Shown here: piece by piece, positions 15,996 through 58,855 of the stretch | How the letters are laid out: the number at the start of each line of letters is the position of its first letter | Numbering within the stretch: the first letter of the stretch is position 1 | Source of the DNA: Octopus sinensis | Taxonomy: Eukaryota | DNA: 64,000 nucleotides | Direction: 5' to 3' | NCBI RefSeq assembly: GCF_006345805.1 | Contig: NC_043000.1 | Span: forward strand, 93,744,001-93,808,000 | Translations under genes and position numbers: made by a program | Notes under the pieces: model-generated | What the model was told of the DNA's origin: nothing | Databases searched by the model: none | The model's input: only the letters and a program-made list of their open reading frames with translations

Positions 15996-16167
15996 AGGCG
16001 CAGGAGTGGCTGTGTGGTAAGTAGTTTGCTAACCAACCACATCGTTCAGGCTTCAGTCCCTCTGCGTGGCACCTTGGGCAAGTGTCTTCTGCTATAGCCC
16101 CGGGCCGACCAATGCCTTGTGAGTGGATTTGGTTGATGGAAACTGAAAGAAGCCTGTCGTATATATG

Positions 16168-16222
<55 letters not shown>

Positions 16223-19042: not shown

Positions 19043-19800
19043 CCAACAGTGACTTTCCAACAGCTACCACTCCATCCATAACCACCATGTTTACCAGTAT
19101 GTATAAAGCACAACCACTTTTATCGGCCGCAATCACATCTGCTCCCATGATTCCTCTCCACTTTCATATAGACCCACCCCCCTCCCTACTACCATTAACA
19201 TAGTCACTGTCATCACGTCCCTCTCTCTAAATGCCCTTCACTGCTACCACACTGATCACCACCTCCATTACAGTGACCACCACTGCTGCAAAGACAATCC
19301 TATGATATTGCTATTACAATAATCCCCTACATCACCATCACTTACTGCAACAATTCCCACCATCACCACCACCATCACTACCACCACCACCACACAACAA
19401 GTGACAACCCTCCCTACCACCACCACCACCACAACAACTAGAACAACAACAACGAACATCCTCCCACTGCTACCACAGGTTAATCACCAGTGTCAAAAGG
19501 TGTCATTCTTTACTCAGAGTGCAGTCTTCCATTGCACCTGAGTGACAGGTTAGTTGGTGACGCATAGCTTAGTTTGCTAGCTTAGCTTAGCATAGCTGCC
19601 TCAGCTGGGTAAGTCATCACCGAATATTTCCAACATGACTGGTGTGTGAGCCTCAAATGCCTCCCCCAAACCCACCTCCTGCCTGTCTATCTGTCTATCT
19701 ATCTATCTATCTATCCATCTATTTATCTGCCTATCTGTTTATATATCCTAATCTGTCTTCCTTATGTAAAAGTGATTATATATAATCATTATATGTGGTT

Positions 19801-19857
19801 TGTGCCTGATGAATATGTTTGAGGTATTTCTCAACATATGAAACTATTAGTAGCACA
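19801..19857 (+). ncRNA. Minimal type I hammerhead ribozyme (PLE type), core and stems intact
   Basis: tgtgc-CTGATGA-atatgtttgag(gtattt)ctcaacatat-GAAA-CTATTAG-TA-gcaca. Stem I is 5 bp, stem II is 10 bp with one bulge, stem III is the palindrome CTA-T-TAG, triplet GUA. Confidence 0.88.
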
Positions 19858-21345
19858 GAAAAACATGTATTGTGTCTAATTAAATAATATTTATTTCTCA
19901 CCAGATGGGGTACTTTTTTGTTGATCTTACCCACCATGGAACAGTACATTATACATATATATAATAATTTTTAATTGCACCTTTCTATACTGTCATGAAT
20001 CAGATGGAATTTTCAAAACTGATTTTCTATGATAGAATGCTTTCATAGTCACCAACCTTCACTTGTTTCCAAACAAGGTGATATTTCCCTGTGACTGGAA
20101 ATGTTTACCAAACCAAACCACTAAGCTACAAGGATGTAAATACACCTATACCAGTTTTCAAGAAGTAGTGAGGGACAAACATACGCATGAAGGTTCGCAG
20201 ACACGCACACACACACACAAGACAGGCTTCTTTCAGATTGTCTACGAAATCCACTAACAAAGCTATGGTCAGCCCAAGGCTATAGTGGAAGGCACTTGGC
20301 CAAGGTGTCATGCAATGGGACTGAACCCTGAACAATGCGGTTGGGAAGGAGGCATTTTAACACACACCCATGACTGCCCCTATGAGTACTTTTCCCTGAT
20401 ACCAGCACTAGTCTGGCTACCAAGTAATTCATAAGACAAAGCAAAATAGCCCTTCAACTGAGTAGAGTTGTAGTAGAGATTGTGGAGTGGGGGCACTTTA
20501 TGCCTCATTTTAAGAGGCTAAAGTATGATAGAGGAATATTAATTACTTGTAGGGACATCATATTTATTTATGCAACCCCAATATACTACAAAGTACATTA
20601 AACACTTTATAAGTTAATACTTTGCACTTCTGTGTTAGCAGTGCTATTAAAGATAATACTTGTTAAGGTTGTCTCTACAGATGTTTCTAAAGAAATTATA
20701 GCCAGCATTGATTTGTGCTAGCTATAGAACAGGCACAGGTGTCTTGCTGTAGAGAAGATAAATGGCTACTCAGCATTATTCAAAGGTGGGTGAGAATAGC
20801 TGGAAAGAAGACAAGGATGGTGGTAGCAAGGTATCAGAGTGTCTCAAAATACAAAATGAGTATAAGAGAGAATCAGGAAATTCTGTGTGTGTGTATATGT
20901 GTGTGTGTGTTCGTGTGCATGTCTTGTAAAATGTAACATGAAAACTGACAATATACAAGTGTAGGCGATAGAATTACATGGGCAGAAAGATAAATATTGA
21001 ATATACAAAAATGACATTGTTTAACATGTCAGTAATATTGCTTGCTGTATATATATTTGTTTATATACATTTTATGTTTTATGTTATGTGGTAGCAATAT
21101 GCACCATATAACATGTAGTTGTTTATTAATTTTTTTATTTCATTTGTTTATTTGTCAACCTCTTTTTTTTCCTATTCATTAATTAGAAATGTTATATGGT
21201 TGCTGTAAGATTGTTGCTACTGTTGTTATTATTGTTGCTGCTGATTCTGCTGTTAGTAGTGGTAATATAGCAGTGGGTTGTGGTAGCATCCACCACCGCC
21301 TCCACTAACTACTACTGCTGCTGCTGCACTTTATTTTCCTTAAAT

Positions 21346-41427: not shown

Positions 41428-41568
41428 GCTTTGAACAAAAAGGAACATAAGGGCTGTGAGAGTCCAGAACCAGACCATGAACAATACATGCTGGGACCGC
41501 GCTCAGAGGAGAAATATGGCCGCATCAACGAGGAATACGCAAGAGTCATGCAACAGAACTCCATACGG
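41428..41568 (+). CDS. MEF2: MEF2 exon immediately after the MADS/MEF2 domain (alpha-exon/HJURP_C-like region): ALNKKEHKGCESPEPDHEQYMLGPRSEEKYGRINEEYARVMQQNSIR
   Basis: Acceptor ttcttag, donor CGG|gtaagt; 141 nt, phase 0-0. The peptide closely resembles the vertebrate MEF2A alpha exon as I recall it (ALNKKEHRGCDSPDPD...EEKYKKINEEF). Confidence 0.95.
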
Positions 41569-42852
41569 GTAAGTCAACAAAGCTCCTACTCTAGTGATAT
41601 TCCTTTGTACTTCCAATCCAGATCCGGCCATCAACAGGCAACCGATACATGTCACCCAAGCTAGTTAGGTTCAGTCTTTTACATTGAATGTTCAAGGCTG
41701 AGGTGTAGCTTTGGTGTGGAAGCTTGCATGGTGCTATGCTTTACTGCAGTCACAGAGTTTAAATCCTGTAGCTGACGTTATAATATTCCAGCATTGTCCT
41801 GCCATATTGCTTCTGTCATGTATACATAGGATGGATTCTCTTATCATTCACAACAAATGAGGGTTCAGTAAAATAATGTTCTATGGACATGCATGTGTCT
41901 CTTGAAGCTTGTTGGTGCCTTGCAAACCTTTTTTTGGCAAATTGAACAGGTTAAGGAATCAGTTTGCTCGAGTGCTTGTGGATCATTTACTATGTGTTTG
42001 CTTGAGTAGATGGCAAGGCCTGCTTTACTCTGCCGCAAAGCCACAACGAAAGTAAAAGTAAAGTAAAGCTACCTTTACGAGTCGTAACGTGAGATTGCAG
42101 CTGTAGCCTACATCAGTGTCGCATAACCAGCCCACTTAAAAAAGTACCTTTGGATTGTCGGGCAACATGTCGTGCTTGAGGAGATCTCTTGAGTCATGTA
42201 TACCAAAATCAAAGTCAAATGAAAATTGTAGTTGTGGCTGATGCCAGTACTGCCTGACCCCGACCGGCTTTTGTGCCGATGGAACATAAAAAGCACTAGC
42301 TGAACATAACCAATGCCAGTGCCGCCTAACTGGCTCCCATCCCGGTGGCATGTAAAAAGCACCCACTACACTCTCAGAGTGGTTGGCGTTAAGAAGGGCA
42401 TCCAGCTGTAGAAACATTGCCAGATCAGATTGGAGCCTGGTGCAGCCTCCTGGCTTGCCAGTCCCCAGTCAAACCATCCAACCCATGCCAGCATGGAAAA
42501 CGGAGGTTAAACGATTATGATGATGATGTGAAACATGGAGTAGATAAAACGGGACAACTGATGAAGGGAATGTTCTTTATGTTGCCTGTCTTGTTTATCT
42601 ATTTGTTTCTTTCATTGTTCAAAAAAAAGTTTGTTTCCTATATTTTTGTTTTTTATATTCTCGTTTCTCATTTTGTTCACATGTTTTTGATGTCCTGTAC
42701 CCATATATGCATATATATATATACATATATATGTAGGTATGTACATATATGTATGTATAGATGCATATAGTTATTATTTATATGATATATATAATATATA
42801 TATATATATACATATACCTACATATAATATATATGCATATACAAATATATAT

Positions 42853-44655: not shown

Positions 44656-47600
44656 TTCTGGAGTTTCCTCGATGAGCACTTGATTTCTCATATAGGGGAA
44701 TGCTGTCATCCCTTGGTTGAGGAATCAGAACACACAACAGAGAAGCTCCAGAACATCATGCCATTAAATCACCTTTTAAATAAGCTTTTGTACATTAACT
44801 TATGTATTTCATTCTTCTCCTGTTCATTATTACACACATACATATACATATGTATGTATGTGTGTGTGTGTGTGTGTCTTTCCTGTATCTTCTAGCCACT
44901 GTCTCCACCCCTGGGACAATCTGTTGTTTTTCTCCTGTCAACCCAGCCCCCCCCCCCATCTTTTTTTCACTCTTACCTCAACAACATTCTAGGCTTTTTC
45001 AGGGCCTTATCATTATTTCTCCTCTACCCTGCATTTTTGAAATCCCTATCCATTTTTGCCTCTTTCATCTCCCTCAATTATCTTCGTCTCTCTCTCCCCC
45101 CCTCTCTCTAAATATATATATATATAGTTTCTCTTCCTTCTCCTCAATTATCTTCCCTCTCCCTCACTCTTTCTCTCTTCCCCTCTCTCTCTCTCACAAT
45201 TTATATAGTTTTTTTTTTATATTTAAAAATAATAAAAATTGGCCCATTCCTAAATACCTATATGATCCCTTTTTTTCTGCTGCCTGCACCTACCTCTGCC
45301 CTACCACCAACACTGACACCTCCTCCTCTATCACCACCACCACCATCACTCCTAATACCATTCTGGTGGTGGTAGCCACAGTTATTGGTGTTCCCTTCCT
45401 CACTCGCTACTTATCTCACCTGTACTTCATCCTTGATATTCTCTCAACCTGAACTATCTCTTACATTTTTTTTTATCTTCAACTTACTTCCTTCCCATCA
45501 TCCAGTTCACCACCTTCCCTACACCTCCCCACCGAATTGCTACCTTTCCCACCCTCGGGTGAATGAGCTGTTCACCTGCCCCCCCTCCCCCCATCCAACA
45601 TCTGTAGCTACCCTCATCTCTAGTCTTAGAGATGGGGGTTTTCTTTCCCCACTTTTTTTTAGAACAGACCATCGGTTTGTTTTTGTTGTTTTTATTTTTG
45701 ATATGATATGATCTAAAGTGGGGAGGGTTGAATTTTAGGGGTGGAGTAGTTTGGGGGGTTTATATTTTTGTTATATATTTCATGCAGACATGGCTGTGTG
45801 GTAAGAAGTTTGCTTCCCAACCACATGGTTCCAGGTTCAGTCTCACTGCATTGCACCTTGGATAAGTATCTTCTACTGTAGCCTTGGGCCAACCAATGCC
45901 TTGCAAGTGGATTTGGTAGATGGAAACAGAAAGAAGCCTGTTGTGTGTGTGTGTGTGTGTGCATGAGGCTGTGTAATCTTAGTGTCTCTTTGTCTTCATA
46001 TCACATGATAGTGGTACCATCATATAAGCAGTCTTCTTTATTTGCTGCCTTCCCTGAATCCATGTCTGGTCATGGGGTGGGTGCAGGAATATTACCTTGC
46101 TTGCAAGCAATTGAAGGTCTGCAACAGGAAAGGCATCTATCTATAGAACCTCTGCCTCATCAGATTCCATCTGCCCCTTCTGAGCATGGAAATGTTGATA
46201 TTAAAACAACGATGATGAAAATATCGGTGTAGTAATAGAGGCAGTGGTGGTGGTGGTGGTGATGGTGGTGGTGGTGACAGCAGTTGTTGTTGTTGTTGTC
46301 ATATCTTTTGTCAAAGAATGTTTTTTCAATTCTACCAGAACTAACAGAGCTTATCTCTAAGTGATTGTTGATAATATGAAATACTGAATTGACATCCTTC
46401 CTAGACATTCTTTACATCTGTCTCAAGGGGAATTATTAGAAAAATAATAAATTCTAAAAACATACTGGGGGCTTCATTCAATTGTCTACATCTCTCTCTC
46501 TCTCTCTTTCTCCCCCTATCTCCTGGCCTTAACATATTATTTTGAGATAGTCAAAAGACTATAAAGACCTAGTATCAGATTGAAAGACTATTTTGTATTT
46601 AGTTTCATATTTCTGTACCCTTCAGAAGTTCTTGAGGGAAGGTAGTGCCTACAGCCCACTACAGAGCCACCGTAACTGGTCAGAGGGTAGGACTAGGTCC
46701 CTTTCATTTTCATTTATATAGAGTAGTCAAGAAGACCCTTCCTCCACAGCAGAAGTGATAATGCTGCTCCCCCTTTTTAAGAGGATTCACATGCAGGAGC
46801 CCTATAGTAGAAAGGATTATTATTATTATTCAATACTGTTTTATAATCTGTGGGGTCTGCAAAGCCCTAGAAATAGTAAAATTCAAAACTAAATGTTTTA
46901 TAGTATTCTTGGAATGTTAATTCATGGTCTGATGCTGAGGAAACATGCACCCAGTACGCTCAAGGGTTAATTGCAAATGATTAAAGAACTACATCATTTA
47001 CCATTTCACAAGAGTTGGGTGGCCAATATTGGGTTCTACATCCAGTTAGATGCTTCAGACAGTTTTGTTTCATCTCTATGTTTTTGTTCCCTACTTTGTT
47101 CAAATTCTAACCACAGTGGATTTTACATTTCATCTTCCATCGCTTGACAAAAAAAAAACATACCTAGTATTTGCTAGAGATAATTCAAAGATAATTCATT
47201 AACTCCAATGCCGTGTGAAGTTATGTTGTATATCTGCTGTCATGGGTCGGACTGATATGACCATCAGCTGGGTCCAATGTAAATTTCATCCTGCAGAAGG
47301 GGTTGTTTGGTGAACCAGATTGAAAGGACTGAAGACAGACACCTTCATCTTTTGCCAGGCCCTCATCAGATTTTTCAGGCTTCACTTGAAATTAAAAGTA
47401 AGAGTAGAAAGGGAAGTGCTGCCTCCCAGCAAATTTGTTGAAAGGTGAACAAGAGTGGTGAGCATGATTCAAGTGAAAGGTCATGCTCTGAGCATCCATT
47501 TATAGATTAAAAGAGGGCAGCAGAGAGTGAGCACTTGCATTCGTGGTCAGGATATTCATTGTTTTGTGGGGTTTTAACAAGGTTTTACCCCTTTTAAAAA

Positions 47601-47711
47601 AATTATTCATTGCATGGAATTTATTGTTTTTTTGTTACTGTTATTCTACTGTTTTTTCAACCCATAGGAGTTAATAAAGAAAATATTATTATCATTATTT
47701 CTTTTTTTCAG

Positions 47712-47895
47712 GCAAGTATGCAGCAGTATCCAAATGTGTCGATGCCAGTCAGTGTACCTCTACATAACCCTGGCTACATGGTCCAGTCTCCGATCACTTC
47801 CTCGCTGGCTCAAAATTCATCTATTAGTAGCACAACAGGTCTGCTTCAACCACATGGGGTTGGACCCAGTGTCAGTCCAAGACCAAATTCCACAG
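47712..47895 (+). CDS. MEF2: MEF2 exon: ASMQQYPNVSMPVSVPLHNPGYMVQSPITSSLAQNSSISSTTGLLQPHGVGPSVSPRPNST(G)
   Basis: Acceptor ctttttttcag, donor CAG|gttagt; 184 nt, phase 0-1, in frame with the previous exon. SMPVSVP and RPxSTG resemble the MEF2 SMSVTVPV and RPPSTG motifs. Confidence 0.92.
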
Positions 47896-47949
47896 GTTAG
47901 TATTCGATAAGCTATCTCATTATTCTGTTTCATATTTAGATAGATACAG

Positions 47950-51066: not shown

Positions 51067-51150
51067 CACACACACACTGATAACCATATGCATAATTACA
51101 TATACTCAAATATGTTAAGAATCATTTCTTTTTTTAAAATTTTGTTGTAG

Positions 51151-51335
51151 GTGGAATGGTCGATCTCAGTACCTCTGCTGCTAATAGCTATCAGCAGAGA
51201 TCTTCGCCCAGCACATCTCCTGGGGTCTTGTCGAACAAAGTTATGACCAAACAGTCTCCGAATTCACAGCAGAGACAGACCCATAACTTGCGAGTCATGA
51301 TACCAAACTGCAGAGGAGATATGATGAATTCAGAG
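51151..51335 (+). CDS. MEF2: MEF2 exon: (G)GMVDLSTSAANSYQQRSSPSTSPGVLSNKVMTKQSPNSQQRQTHNLRVMIPNCRGDMMNSE
   Basis: Acceptor tttgttgtag, donor GAG|gtaact; 185 nt, phase 1-0. KQSP and NLRVMIP correspond to the MEF2 KSPPP and DLRVLIP motifs. Confidence 0.92.
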
Positions 51336-51429
51336 GTAACTACTGTTGCTAGTATCTTGTCATATTCTCCCATTGGTAATATTGTCACTGCTTTTGTTTT
51401 ATTGTTCTCATTGTTGTTGCTGTCATTGT

Positions 51430-51940
51430 TTAGGCTCAATTCAGCTTTTTTTATTTGCTTGATGAAGGAGTCGAATGAGGTGGGGCTAAATCTAAGATCA
51501 GAAATGTTCTTGTTGAAATGTCCTGTTCCATGTTTCAATATATTAGACAGGGAGTGAATCTGTGTCCTTCTTTTAGATATGAAATGGTGTGGCATAATGC
51601 TTAGTTGGCTCCCATTTCATGCAGGTCAAGCAGTTGTTTAATAGGCCCTTCAATGGCTCAATACTGTGTTTGTTGTTTTTGTTGCAGTCAATGTTCAGCC
51701 ATTTTTTTGTTTTGTTTCATGAAGGGGTCGAATGAGGAGGAGCTAAATCTAAGATCAGAGATATTCTTGTTGTGACATGTCCCATGTTTCCATATATTTG
51801 GAAGAAAGTAAATCATCCAGTGTGTCCTTCTTTAAAAAACGAAACAGTGAAACTTAATGCTTAGTTGGCTCCCATTTCATGCAGGTCAAGCAAATGTGTA
51901 GCAGATCCTTTGATGATTCAATACTGTTTATGTTGTTGTT
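51430..51940. repeat. Diverged tandem duplication of about 255 bp
   Basis: Two units share gtcgaatgagg..g.gctaaatctaagatcaga and an identical taatgcttagttggctcccatttcatgcaggtcaagca. Confidence 0.85.
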
Positions 51941-58454: not shown

Positions 58455-58855
58455 TTTTATTCTTTGACTTGTTTCTGTCACTTGACTGTGGCCATGCTGG
58501 AGCACTGCCTTTAGTTGAACAAATCGACCTCAGGACTTATTCTTTCTAAGCCTATCAGTCTCTTTTGCCGAACTGTTAAGTTACGGGGACGTAAACACAC
58601 CAACATCGATTGTCAAGAGATTGTATGGTGACAGACACAGACACACAAATGCATACACACACACACACACACACACACACGCATATATATATGACAAGCT
58701 TCTTTCAGTTTCCGTCTACCAGATCTATTCACAAGTCTTTGGTCTGCTTGAGGCTATAGTAGAAGACACTTGCCCAAGGTGCCACGCAGTGGGACTGGAC
58801 CCAGAACCATGTAGTTGGGAAGTAAGCTTCTTACCACACAGCCACACCTGTGCCT
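58455..58855 (-). mobile_element. Family A SINE, full-length
   Basis: Reverse complement matches 15996-16430. Confidence 0.85.

What the first reader, a model, noticed from the sequence alone, without database searches (positions are those of the whole stretch)
19801..19857. Structurally complete minimal hammerhead ribozyme on the MEF2 sense strand
Seen: every conserved core base (CUGAUGA, GAAA, UA), a perfect stem I (extendable to 7 bp with one wobble), a 10-bp stem II, and a palindromic CUA-U-UAG stem III; predicted cleavage after 19852. Known: minimal type I hammerheads with palindromic stem III are typical of Penelope-like elements and usually cleave as dimers. Inference: if the MADS exons lie upstream of the window, this sits in a MEF2 intron in sense orientation and could cut the pre-mRNA co-transcriptionally. 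It is the best-preserved copy in the window.
Basis: partly seen in the sequence, partly recalled or inferred. Interest (0 to 1): 0.75.

Follow-up and report, generated by a model that had tools for sequence, protein, structure and literature searches.

The report
Truncated Penelope retrotransposon end with hammerhead
The hammerhead-ribozyme motif is real, but it is the last ~160 bases of one of about a thousand copies of an octopus Penelope-like retrotransposon that landed in a huge MEF2 intron; a lone copy like this is very unlikely to cut the MEF2 transcript, so the finding is ordinary.

Summary
Observation confirmed. Window 19799-19859 (+) holds every hammerhead core base, a 5-bp stem I (7 bp only in this copy), a 10-bp stem II with one bulge, and a palindromic stem III. 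The predicted cut is after A19852. It is the only such motif in the window, not the "best of several". No Rfam hammerhead model reports it, and its 10.1-11.1 pair is A-U rather than the conserved G-C.

It is not a MEF2 feature. Window ~19788-19946 is a 5'-truncated copy of an interspersed repeat (1183 first-look candidates; scored copies 87-96% identical). Longer copies run upstream without a break into decayed reading frames. Relatives of these frames elsewhere show reverse-transcriptase motifs by eye and a GIY-YIG nuclease domain, which points to a Penelope-like element. The family also shows Penelope insertion marks:
- graded 5' truncation;
- head-to-head inverted pairs;
- an optional ~55-nt 3' tail on exactly one arm in 8 of 8 pairs;
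- (TA)n/(TG)n targets.

The MEF2 context holds: the MADS/MEF2 exon lies ~110 kb upstream on the + strand, and later exon-like frames lie at 41-51 kb. Cleavage of the pre-mRNA is unlikely. Monomer stem III is unstable, no partner copy lies in the window, and an inactive fold is 4.8 kcal/mol more stable. No RNA evidence could be obtained. This scan has already noted many such elements in this genome.

The parts
19768..19787 (.). TA-rich 5' flank, the likely microsatellite target. The element boundary is ambiguous within 19785-19790.
   Evidence: sequence. Family copies lie in (TA)n/(TG)n.
19788..19946 (+). 5'-truncated copy (about 159 nt) of the 3' untranslated end of a Penelope-like retrotransposon family. 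It matches positions ~315-471 of the 3' module as I numbered it on L029:1952-2425.
   Evidence: 87-96% identity to copies genome-wide; longer copies continue upstream into decayed frames related to proteins with RT motifs and a GIY-YIG domain.
19799..19859 (+). Minimal type I hammerhead motif, including the private 2-pair extension of stem I.
19806..19812 (+). Core box CUGAUGA (C3-A9).
   Evidence: 25 of 36 aligned family copies keep all core bases.
19813..19839 (+). Stem II (7 + 3 bp, U19820 bulged) and a 6-nt loop. The closing pair is A19813-U19839 instead of G10.1-C11.1.
19840..19852 (+). GAAA box, palindromic stem III (CUA-U-UAG), then U16.1 and A17. The predicted scissile bond is between 19852 and 19853.
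   Evidence: hairpin +2.1 kcal/mol, self-duplex -4.9 kcal/mol.
19892..19946 (+). Optional 3' "tail" of the element. It is present in about 60% of family copies and on only one arm of each inverted pair.
   Evidence: 16 short ends, 23 long ends, 8 of 8 pairs discordant.
19947..19985 (.). TA-rich 3' flank (target microsatellite remnant).
41428..41661 (+). Context: open frame holding the MEF2 exon that follows the MADS/MEF2 domain (ALNKKEHKGCESPEPD...). Further MEF2-like frames lie at 47598-47897 and 51138-51554.
   Evidence: Recognised by eye from my knowledge of MEF2A-D sequences. The MADS exon was found by Pfam PF00319.

Best explanation
Window ~19788-19946 is the product of an aborted (heavily 5'-truncated) target-primed reverse transcription of a Penelope-like element (PLE). 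The insertion went into a TA-rich microsatellite that lies inside the >150-kb MEF2 intron between the MADS/MEF2-domain exon and the next coding exon. Only the element's last ~160 nt were copied: the hammerhead module, which in fuller copies starts ~200 nt after the end of the reading frame, plus the optional 3' tail.

The hammerhead is a feature of the retrotransposon family. At family level it would act, if it acts at all, on multi-unit element transcripts where two copies can pair through the palindromic stem III. Alternatively it may serve as a structured 3' element for the element's own enzyme.

This solo copy has no promoter of its own and is transcribed only passively as MEF2 intron RNA. 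It most likely does nothing. The monomer cannot form a stable stem III, there are no stem I/II loop contacts, no second copy is nearby, and a competing rod-like fold sequesters the CUGAUG box.

What is shown and what is inferred:
- Shown: the motif, family membership, the insertion signatures, continuity with the coding remnants, and the MEF2 context.
- Inferred: lack of cleavage, and the family-level role of the motif.
For: Repeat family: (1183 first-look candidates, 40 scored, 87-96% identity).

Penelope insertion signatures (46 unique copies):
- Graded 5' truncation: starts at unit 1-15 (15 copies), 212-242 (9), 310-320 (12).
- Two 3' ends: unit 405-425 (16 copies) and >=460 (23 copies).
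- 8 of 8 head-to-head pairs have one short and one long arm. From those frequencies I calculate about 0.003 by chance.
- Flanks are (TA)n/(TG)n.
- These marks match Craig 2021 (PMC8557442: 5' truncation, adjacent inverted truncated copy, tail often at one end only, microsatellite bias) and Frangieh 2024 (PMC11167929: two internal RT start sites define the tail; both DNA strands are extended).

Coding link:
- Copies L081-L090 are conserved without a break from decayed frames to the hammerhead.
- tblastn of P0072 and P0107 onto them gives E down to 1e-46, with the frame ending ~200 nt before CUGAUGA.
- The 113-aa frame piece has 2896 relatives.
- Long relatives show F-D-x-x-D-F-Y-P-S-I and Y-R-D-D-G motifs by eye.
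- 9 of 60 relatives pass Pfam GIY-YIG at E<=0.01.
- The nearest named ESM Atlas clusters carry GIY-YIG and RVT_1 (a lead only).

Inactivity:
- The hammerhead fold is -12.7 kcal/mol, the MFE is -17.5 and the ensemble is -19.2.
- The stem III hairpin is +2.1 kcal/mol. The self-duplex is -4.9, which I calculate as a Kd near 0.3 mM.
- There is no second copy in the 64 kb.
- Literature: a single Penelope-type minimal hammerhead gave no detectable cleavage and dimers gave low cleavage (PMC4209133). Cleavage was not needed, and no RNA-seq ends were found at the site, for an Anolis PLE (PMC11167929). Only 1 of 9 Xenopus dimer constructs cleaved, and 44% of Xenopus retrozyme copies are intronic (doi 10.64898/2026.07.22.740005).
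Against: - No RNA data could be laid, so neither transcription nor absence of cleavage is shown.
- All core bases are intact in this copy. Core positions are about half as diverged as the rest across 35 copies (3.3% vs 6.5%, Fisher p=0.01). This hints that source elements keep the core under constraint, so the family motif may be catalytically competent.
- Nearest-neighbour energies ignore the tertiary interactions of the hammerhead core.
- The reverse-transcriptase identity of the upstream frame rests on motifs read by eye and on Atlas leads. Pfam RVT_1 and PDB sequence searches found nothing.
- The full-length element and its 5' end were not reached.
Confidence: 0.85

Rival explanations
1. 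One reading: the copy is an active intronic ribozyme that cuts nascent MEF2 pre-mRNA after A19852 and so lowers or shapes MEF2 expression.
For: - The core and stems are intact.
- It is in sense orientation inside a MEF2 intron.
- Core bases are somewhat better kept across the family.
Against: - It is one of about a thousand family copies, and introns are a normal landing place (44% of Xenopus retrozyme copies, doi 10.64898/2026.07.22.740005).
- There is no dimer partner in the 64 kb.
- Stem III as a hairpin is +2.1 kcal/mol, and an inactive fold is favoured by 4.8 kcal/mol.
- The 10.1-11.1 pair is A-U.
- Single Penelope-type motifs were inactive in vitro (PMC4209133).
- No RNA ends were seen at a PLE hammerhead site in vivo (PMC11167929).
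- From my own knowledge (Fong, Ohman and Bentley 2009): only fast-cleaving ribozymes in introns disturb splicing.
Confidence: 0.04
2. The family motif is not used as a ribozyme at all. The long stem II hairpin and its surroundings are a structural signal near the two reverse-transcription start sites, and the hammerhead core is an inherited but now idle relic.
For: - Every copy longer than ~95 nt spans the scissile site uncut, so the templates were uncleaved there.
- The motif lies 38 nt before the short 3' end and 94 nt before the long one, comparable to the Anolis element, where RT starts ~85-92 nt after the cut site and cleavage is dispensable (PMC11167929).
- It lacks the conserved G10.1-C11.1 pair and the extra base after A9 of other Penelope-type motifs (PMC4209133).
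- There is no covariation among copies.
Against: - The core is completely canonical in the consensus and less diverged than the rest.
- The palindromic stem III is kept.
- Absence of covariation among young, neutrally decaying copies says nothing either way.
Confidence: 0.3
3. A chance hammerhead look-alike inside an unrelated repeat (a MITE or SINE), with no ribozyme ancestry.
For: No Rfam hammerhead model reports it. The first pair of stem II is atypical.
Against: - Chance expectation is 0.037 loose hits per 128 kb scanned, and 0 in 300 windows for stems this long.
- The palindromic stem III comes on top of that and was not required by the scan.
- It sits where Penelope elements carry hammerheads, downstream of an RT-like/GIY-YIG frame.
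- A DNA-transposon reading is contradicted by graded 5' truncation, heads-inward pairs and unequal arms.
Confidence: 0.03

Closest known systems
Minimal hammerhead motifs of Penelope-like elements (Cervera & de la Pena 2014, PMC4209133)
   Same: - Type I topology with an open stem I of 4-5 bp.
- Unusually long stem II.
- Palindromic stem III that implies dimers.
- Mostly solo motifs from truncated elements.
- Pairs 0-700 bp apart on opposite strands.
- Located in the element's terminal repeat or untranslated region.
   Different: - A-U instead of the highly conserved G10.1-C11.1.
- No extra base between A9 and 10.1; a mid-helix bulge instead (as in the D. virilis variant).
- The stem III palindrome has an odd central U, giving a U-U mismatch in the dimer.
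- No octopus family is described in the papers I could search.
Canonical endonuclease-positive Penelope-like elements (Craig 2021, PMC8557442; Frangieh 2024, PMC11167929)
   Same: - Reading frame with RT-like motifs followed by a C-terminal GIY-YIG domain preceded by a Cys-rich motif.
- 5' truncation and an inverted truncated partner.
- Optional tail at one end.
- Insertion into microsatellites.
- Hammerhead near the RT start sites.
   Different: - The tail is ~55 nt rather than 30-40.
- The protein family is too divergent for Pfam RVT_1 and mostly for GIY-YIG (9 of 60 relatives pass).
- It is unrelated at sequence level to the 30 GIY-YIG loci I sampled in this genome, whose hammerheads are the U3-A8 variant.
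- The full-length element was not recovered.
Animal non-LTR retrozymes (Cervera & de la Pena 2020, PMC7229834; Li et al. 2026 preprint)
   Same: Non-coding hammerhead-bearing repeats linked to Penelope machinery. Monomer copies are scattered, many of them in introns.
   Different: Retrozymes are defined by tandem units that yield circular RNA. None of the 56 family loci I examined holds a tandem, and this family's copies are ends of a coding element.
Conserved intronic hammerheads of amniotes (de la Pena & Garcia-Robles 2010, from my own knowledge)
   Same: A hammerhead in sense orientation inside an intron of a developmental gene.
   Different: Those are single-copy, ultraconserved, and have loop-loop contacts and a stable stem III. 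This one is a young repeat copy without them.

Membership tests
Hammerhead ribozyme (type I) | Conserved core: C3 U4 G5 A6 N7 G8 A9, G12 A13 A14, A15.1-U16.1, H17 | tested here: met
   all present at 19806-12, 19840-43 and 19851-52.
Hammerhead ribozyme (type I) | Three helices around the core, with stems II and III closed and stem I open | tested here: met
   stem I 5 (7) bp, stem II 10 bp with a bulge. Stem III is 3 bp with a 3-nt loop and is predicted unstable (+2.1 kcal/mol) as a monomer.
Hammerhead ribozyme (type I) | Score at or above the gathering threshold of an Rfam hammerhead model | tested here: not met
   no hammerhead model is reported even at E<=10 on 81 nt. RF00163 does find 7 canonical motifs elsewhere in the genome.
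Hammerhead ribozyme (type I) | Covariation supporting the helices | tested here: inconclusive
   86.8% of cells paired, equal to the shuffles (86.9%). There were 3 double changes against 2.7 expected. These are young copies decaying neutrally.
Hammerhead ribozyme (type I) | Site-specific self-cleavage | not testable with these tools
There is no bench access.
Penelope-type minimal hammerhead (PMC4209133) | Long stem II (6-8 bp or more), short stem I (4-5 bp), no loop 1 | tested here: met
Penelope-type minimal hammerhead (PMC4209133) | Palindromic 15.2-16.2 / loop 3 allowing a dimer | tested here: met
   the ACUAUUAGU self-duplex has 8 bp around a U-U mismatch, -4.9 kcal/mol.
Penelope-type minimal hammerhead (PMC4209133) | Conserved G10.1-C11.1 pair | tested here: not met
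   A19813-U19839. The pair is A-U in 34 of 36 copies.
Penelope-type minimal hammerhead (PMC4209133) | Extra nucleotide between A9 and 10.1 | tested here: not met
   stem II starts directly after A9.
Penelope-like element (insertion signature) | Graded 5' truncation, adjacent inverted truncated copy, optional tail at one end, microsatellite target | tested here: met
   at family level. The window copy itself is a single arm with a tail in TA-rich DNA.
Penelope-like element (coding capacity) | One reading frame with reverse transcriptase plus GIY-YIG endonuclease | tested here: inconclusive
   GIY-YIG: 9 of 60 relatives pass Pfam. The octopus copies align to the C-terminal 200-300 aa of P0072/P0107. 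RT: motifs seen by eye in P0027, P0107 and P0072 and Atlas leads, but Pfam and PDB searches found nothing.
Non-LTR retrozyme | Head-to-tail tandem units, each with a hammerhead | tested here: not met
   no tandem in 56 loci of this family. The sample is small and biased towards the best matches.

The most novel reading that the evidence does not exclude
The atypical family hammerhead (A10.1-U11.1, 10-bp stem II) is active as a monomer in vivo with host help, and this sense-strand copy cuts MEF2 pre-mRNA inside its giant intron, tuning the level of a key muscle and neuron transcription factor in octopus.
Probability: 0.03. Interest if true: 0.7.

Novelty: new member of a known kind. Interest (0 to 1): 0.17.

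Why it matters
For MEF2 biology it probably does not matter. A gene with an intron of more than 150 kb in a repeat-rich 2.7-Gb genome will collect such copies by chance.

The value lies at family level. This octopus Penelope-like family is not described in the papers I could search. It carries a hammerhead that breaks two of the "conserved" rules of Penelope-type motifs. Its head-to-head insertions always pair one tailed with one untailed arm. That is a natural record that fits the two reverse-transcription start sites and two-strand priming seen in vitro for an Anolis element.

This scan has already recorded many hammerhead-bearing Penelope-type elements in this genome, so this window adds little that is new.

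Tried and rejected
- **RNA evidence.** The look-up of sequencing runs listed only Logan contigs, with RNA status guessed.
- **Partner copies further out in the intron.** Only the 64-kb window was scanned.
- **tRNA-derived SINE reading.** ARAGORN found no tRNA in 27 loci. Rfam found nothing on a 491-nt unit.
- **"Non-coding 471-nt unit" reading.** Dropped after searches showed that my "unit start" was only the palindrome centre of locus L029 and that copies extend at least 800 nt further into coding remnants.
- **Tandem retrozyme reading.** No tandems were found.
- **Pfam on the octopus frame pieces.** Nothing credible.
- **Comparison with 30 GIY-YIG loci of this genome.** tblastx and phmmer found no real match.
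- **The most abundant Penelope family sampled as source.** Rejected: its hammerhead is the U3-A8 type with a CAUG stem III, and blastn shows no similarity.
- **DNA transposon or MITE with terminal inverted repeats.** Rejected: heads face inward, arms are unequal, and truncation is graded.
- **SNORD30-like match at 19988-20027.** E=1.5, 20.9 bits against a gathering score of 40: chance.
- **Complex prediction and structure prediction.** Not used, because no protein-binding claim is made.

Full report
**1. The motif**

Reading window 19799-19859 on the + strand gives the following layout:
- stem I: UGUGC (19801-05) pairs with GCACA (19853-57);
- core box: CUGAUGA (19806-12);
- stem II: 7 + 3 pairs (19813-19/19833-39 and 19821-23/19830-32) with U19820 bulged, and a 6-nt loop;
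- GAAA (19840-43);
- stem III: the palindrome CUA-U-UAG (19844-50);

A descriptor scan of both strands finds this motif and no other. In 300 first-order Markov random windows the mean was 0.037 loose matches per window. None had stems as long as these.

- The 7-bp stem I needs G19858, which only this copy has. The family consensus pairs 5 bases, or 4 in one subfamily.
- The first pair of stem II is A-U, where hammerheads, Penelope-type ones included, keep G10.1-C11.1 (PMC4209133).
- There is no other copy in the window, whether by blastn or by a relaxed motif scan that also allows the U3-A8 core variant.

No Rfam hammerhead model reports the site at gathering score or at E<=10. RF00163 does find canonical motifs elsewhere in this genome.

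**2. It is a repeat**

A 101-nt query around the motif gave 1183 first-look candidates in the 2.7-Gb assembly. All 40 scored candidates matched at 87-96% identity. Homology to the window runs from about 19788 to about 19946. Beyond that, blastn only aligns TA-rich flank to TA-rich flank.

I compared 46 unique copies. Positions are numbered on a 474-nt reference stretch, L029:1952-2425, in which the window copy is ~315-471.
- **5' starts are graded.** They fall at 1-15 (15 copies), 212-242 (9), 310-320 (12, the window's class) and elsewhere (10).
- **There are two 3' ends.** They fall at 405-425 (16 copies) and >=460 (23 copies). The window copy has the long form. Its extra ~55 nt are 19892-19946.
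- **The flanks are microsatellites.** They are mostly (TA)n or (TG)n.
- **Inverted pairs are unequal.** Eight loci hold two copies head to head with 8-304 nt between them. In all eight, one arm has the short end and the other the long end. From the two frequencies I calculate about 0.003 by chance.

These features match published descriptions of Penelope-like elements. [quoted passage not shown] Frangieh 2024 (PMC11167929) traces the tail to two internal reverse-transcription start sites and shows extension from both DNA strands. Cervera & de la Pena 2014 (PMC4209133) report pairs of minimal hammerheads 100-700 bp apart on opposite strands, and mostly solo motifs from truncated elements.

**3. 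Link to a coding element**

My first "unit start" turned out to be the palindrome centre of locus L029. The 30 nt before it are conserved in 12 of 15 copies. Copies extend a further 480 nt or more (668 first-look candidates) and then thin out over another ~350 nt.

This upstream part holds decayed reading frames shared between copies:
- One 113-aa piece has 2896 relatives at E<=0.001 among 1.84 billion representative proteins. The best is an Octopus vulgaris hypothetical protein.
- Relatives of 606-713 aa show motifs of the reverse-transcriptase type, F-D-x-x-D-F-Y-P-S-I and Y-R-D-D-G, read by eye. These are followed by a Cys-rich stretch and a V-x-Y ... Y-I-G-L-T ... R ... H segment.
- 9 of 60 relatives pass Pfam GIY-YIG at E<=0.01, the best at 1.5e-5.
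- The nearest named ESM Atlas clusters carry GIY-YIG, RVT_1 and HTH_animal (a lead only).
- tblastn places the C-terminal 200-300 residues of these proteins on the octopus copies with E down to 1e-46. The frame ends ~200 nt before the CUGAUGA box.

So the hammerhead module is the 3' untranslated end of an endonuclease-bearing Penelope-like element, and the window holds only its last ~160 nt.

Several caveats apply:
- Pfam RVT_1 and a PDB sequence search found nothing for the long relatives.
- The octopus frames themselves are too decayed for Pfam.
- The family is unrelated at sequence level to the 30 GIY-YIG loci I sampled.
- I did not reach the element's 5' end.

**4. Gene context**

Pfam SRF-TF finds a MADS exon at G000:C4:93633960-93634079 (+). 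Its frame continues through the MEF2 domain (...KYTEYNEPHESRTN...). The exon lies about 110 kb before the window start.

On the window's + strand, open frames at 41428-41661 (ALNKKEHKGCESPEPD...), 47598-47897 and 51138-51554 read like the following MEF2 exons. That recognition rests on my own knowledge of MEF2 proteins. The element therefore lies in a MEF2 intron of more than 150 kb, in sense orientation.

**5. Would this copy cut?**

- **Competing fold.** The hammerhead secondary structure scores -12.7 kcal/mol. The minimum free energy is -17.5 and the ensemble -19.2, and in the favoured fold CUGAUG pairs with the stem III region. By my calculation the hammerhead fold is about 2e-5 of the ensemble. 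This ignores tertiary stabilisation of the core.
- **Stem III.** As a hairpin it is +2.1 kcal/mol. As a self-duplex it is -4.9, which corresponds to a Kd near 0.3 mM. Pairing with family transcripts in trans is therefore negligible, and only a nearby copy in cis could help. There is none in the 64 kb.
- **Tertiary contacts.** Stem I is open and has no loop to contact stem II.
- **Literature.** Single Penelope-type motifs gave no detectable cleavage, and dimers gave low cleavage (PMC4209133). Cleavage was dispensable for an Anolis element, and no RNA-seq ends were seen at its site (PMC11167929). Only 1 of 9 Xenopus dimer constructs cleaved, and 44% of Xenopus retrozyme copies sit in introns (doi 10.64898/2026.07.22.740005).

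Across 36 aligned copies there is no covariation beyond shuffles, as expected for neutrally decaying copies. Core bases are about half as diverged as the rest (3.3% vs 6.5%, p=0.01). 25 of 36 copies keep the whole core. This is weak evidence that source elements keep the core.

**6. What could not be done**

No statement about transcription or RNA ends is therefore possible.
- The look-up of sequencing runs shows only that other runs share 5-54% of the sampled words of 19400-20400. These include runs of two other organism labels and some runs guessed to be RNA.
I could not scan the rest of the intron or compare other species.

**7. Verdict**

The MEF2-regulation inference is very unlikely.

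The object is a new member of a known kind. This scan's earlier notes on this genome already describe many hammerhead-bearing Penelope-type elements and head-to-head insertions. I treated those notes as leads and tested the same features independently on this family.

Noticed in passing
Family loci L003, L011, L015, L021, L022, L024, L033, L038 (e.g. L022:1476-1763): In all 8 head-to-head pairs of this family, one arm ends at the short 3' end and the other carries the ~55-nt tail. This fits the two strands of a target being primed from the two different reverse-transcription start sites.
   Followed up: partly
L058:2358-2402, L067:2361-2405, L071:2206-2253, L072:617-661(-), L073:2359-2403: A different, abundant Penelope family has GIY-YIG frames up to 883 aa (5029 first-look candidates). 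Downstream of the frame it carries a minimal hammerhead with the U3-A8 core covariation (UUGAUAA ... GAAA-CAUG-UA). Its stem II reads GGUUCG, like a tRNA B box.
   Followed up: partly
L044-L050 (e.g. G000:C16:25146363-25146408 and 25146794-25146839): Seven canonical type I hammerheads lie above the Rfam RF00163 gathering score (CUGAAGAG..., 4-bp stem II, CAUGUG stem III). Two of them are 431 nt apart on one strand, which looks like a tandem retrozyme-type repeat.
   Followed up: no
window 41428-41661, 47598-47897, 51138-51554 (+); L043: MEF2 coding exons are spread over more than 170 kb. The intron after the MADS/MEF2-domain exon exceeds 150 kb and is packed with microsatellites and repeats.
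   Followed up: partly
window 20113-20383: Another interspersed repeat lies about 170-280 nt downstream of the element. The window has at least 8 further copies (e.g. 45864-45961, 16079-16172, 58577-58772). It also occurs in loci L014, L020, L022 and L024, but not in a fixed position relative to the Penelope copy.
   Followed up: no
window 19680-19740: A (TCTA)n microsatellite lies about 50 nt upstream of the insertion. Similar arrays recur at 36.4-36.8 kb, 38.2-38.5 kb and 60.0-60.2 kb.
   Followed up: no
family copies starting at unit 310-320 (12 of 46, the window copy included): There is a sharp excess of 5' ends about 13 nt before stem I of the hammerhead. This could be a preferred stop or template-switch point of the reverse transcriptase, or a short subfamily that propagates by itself.
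   Followed up: no
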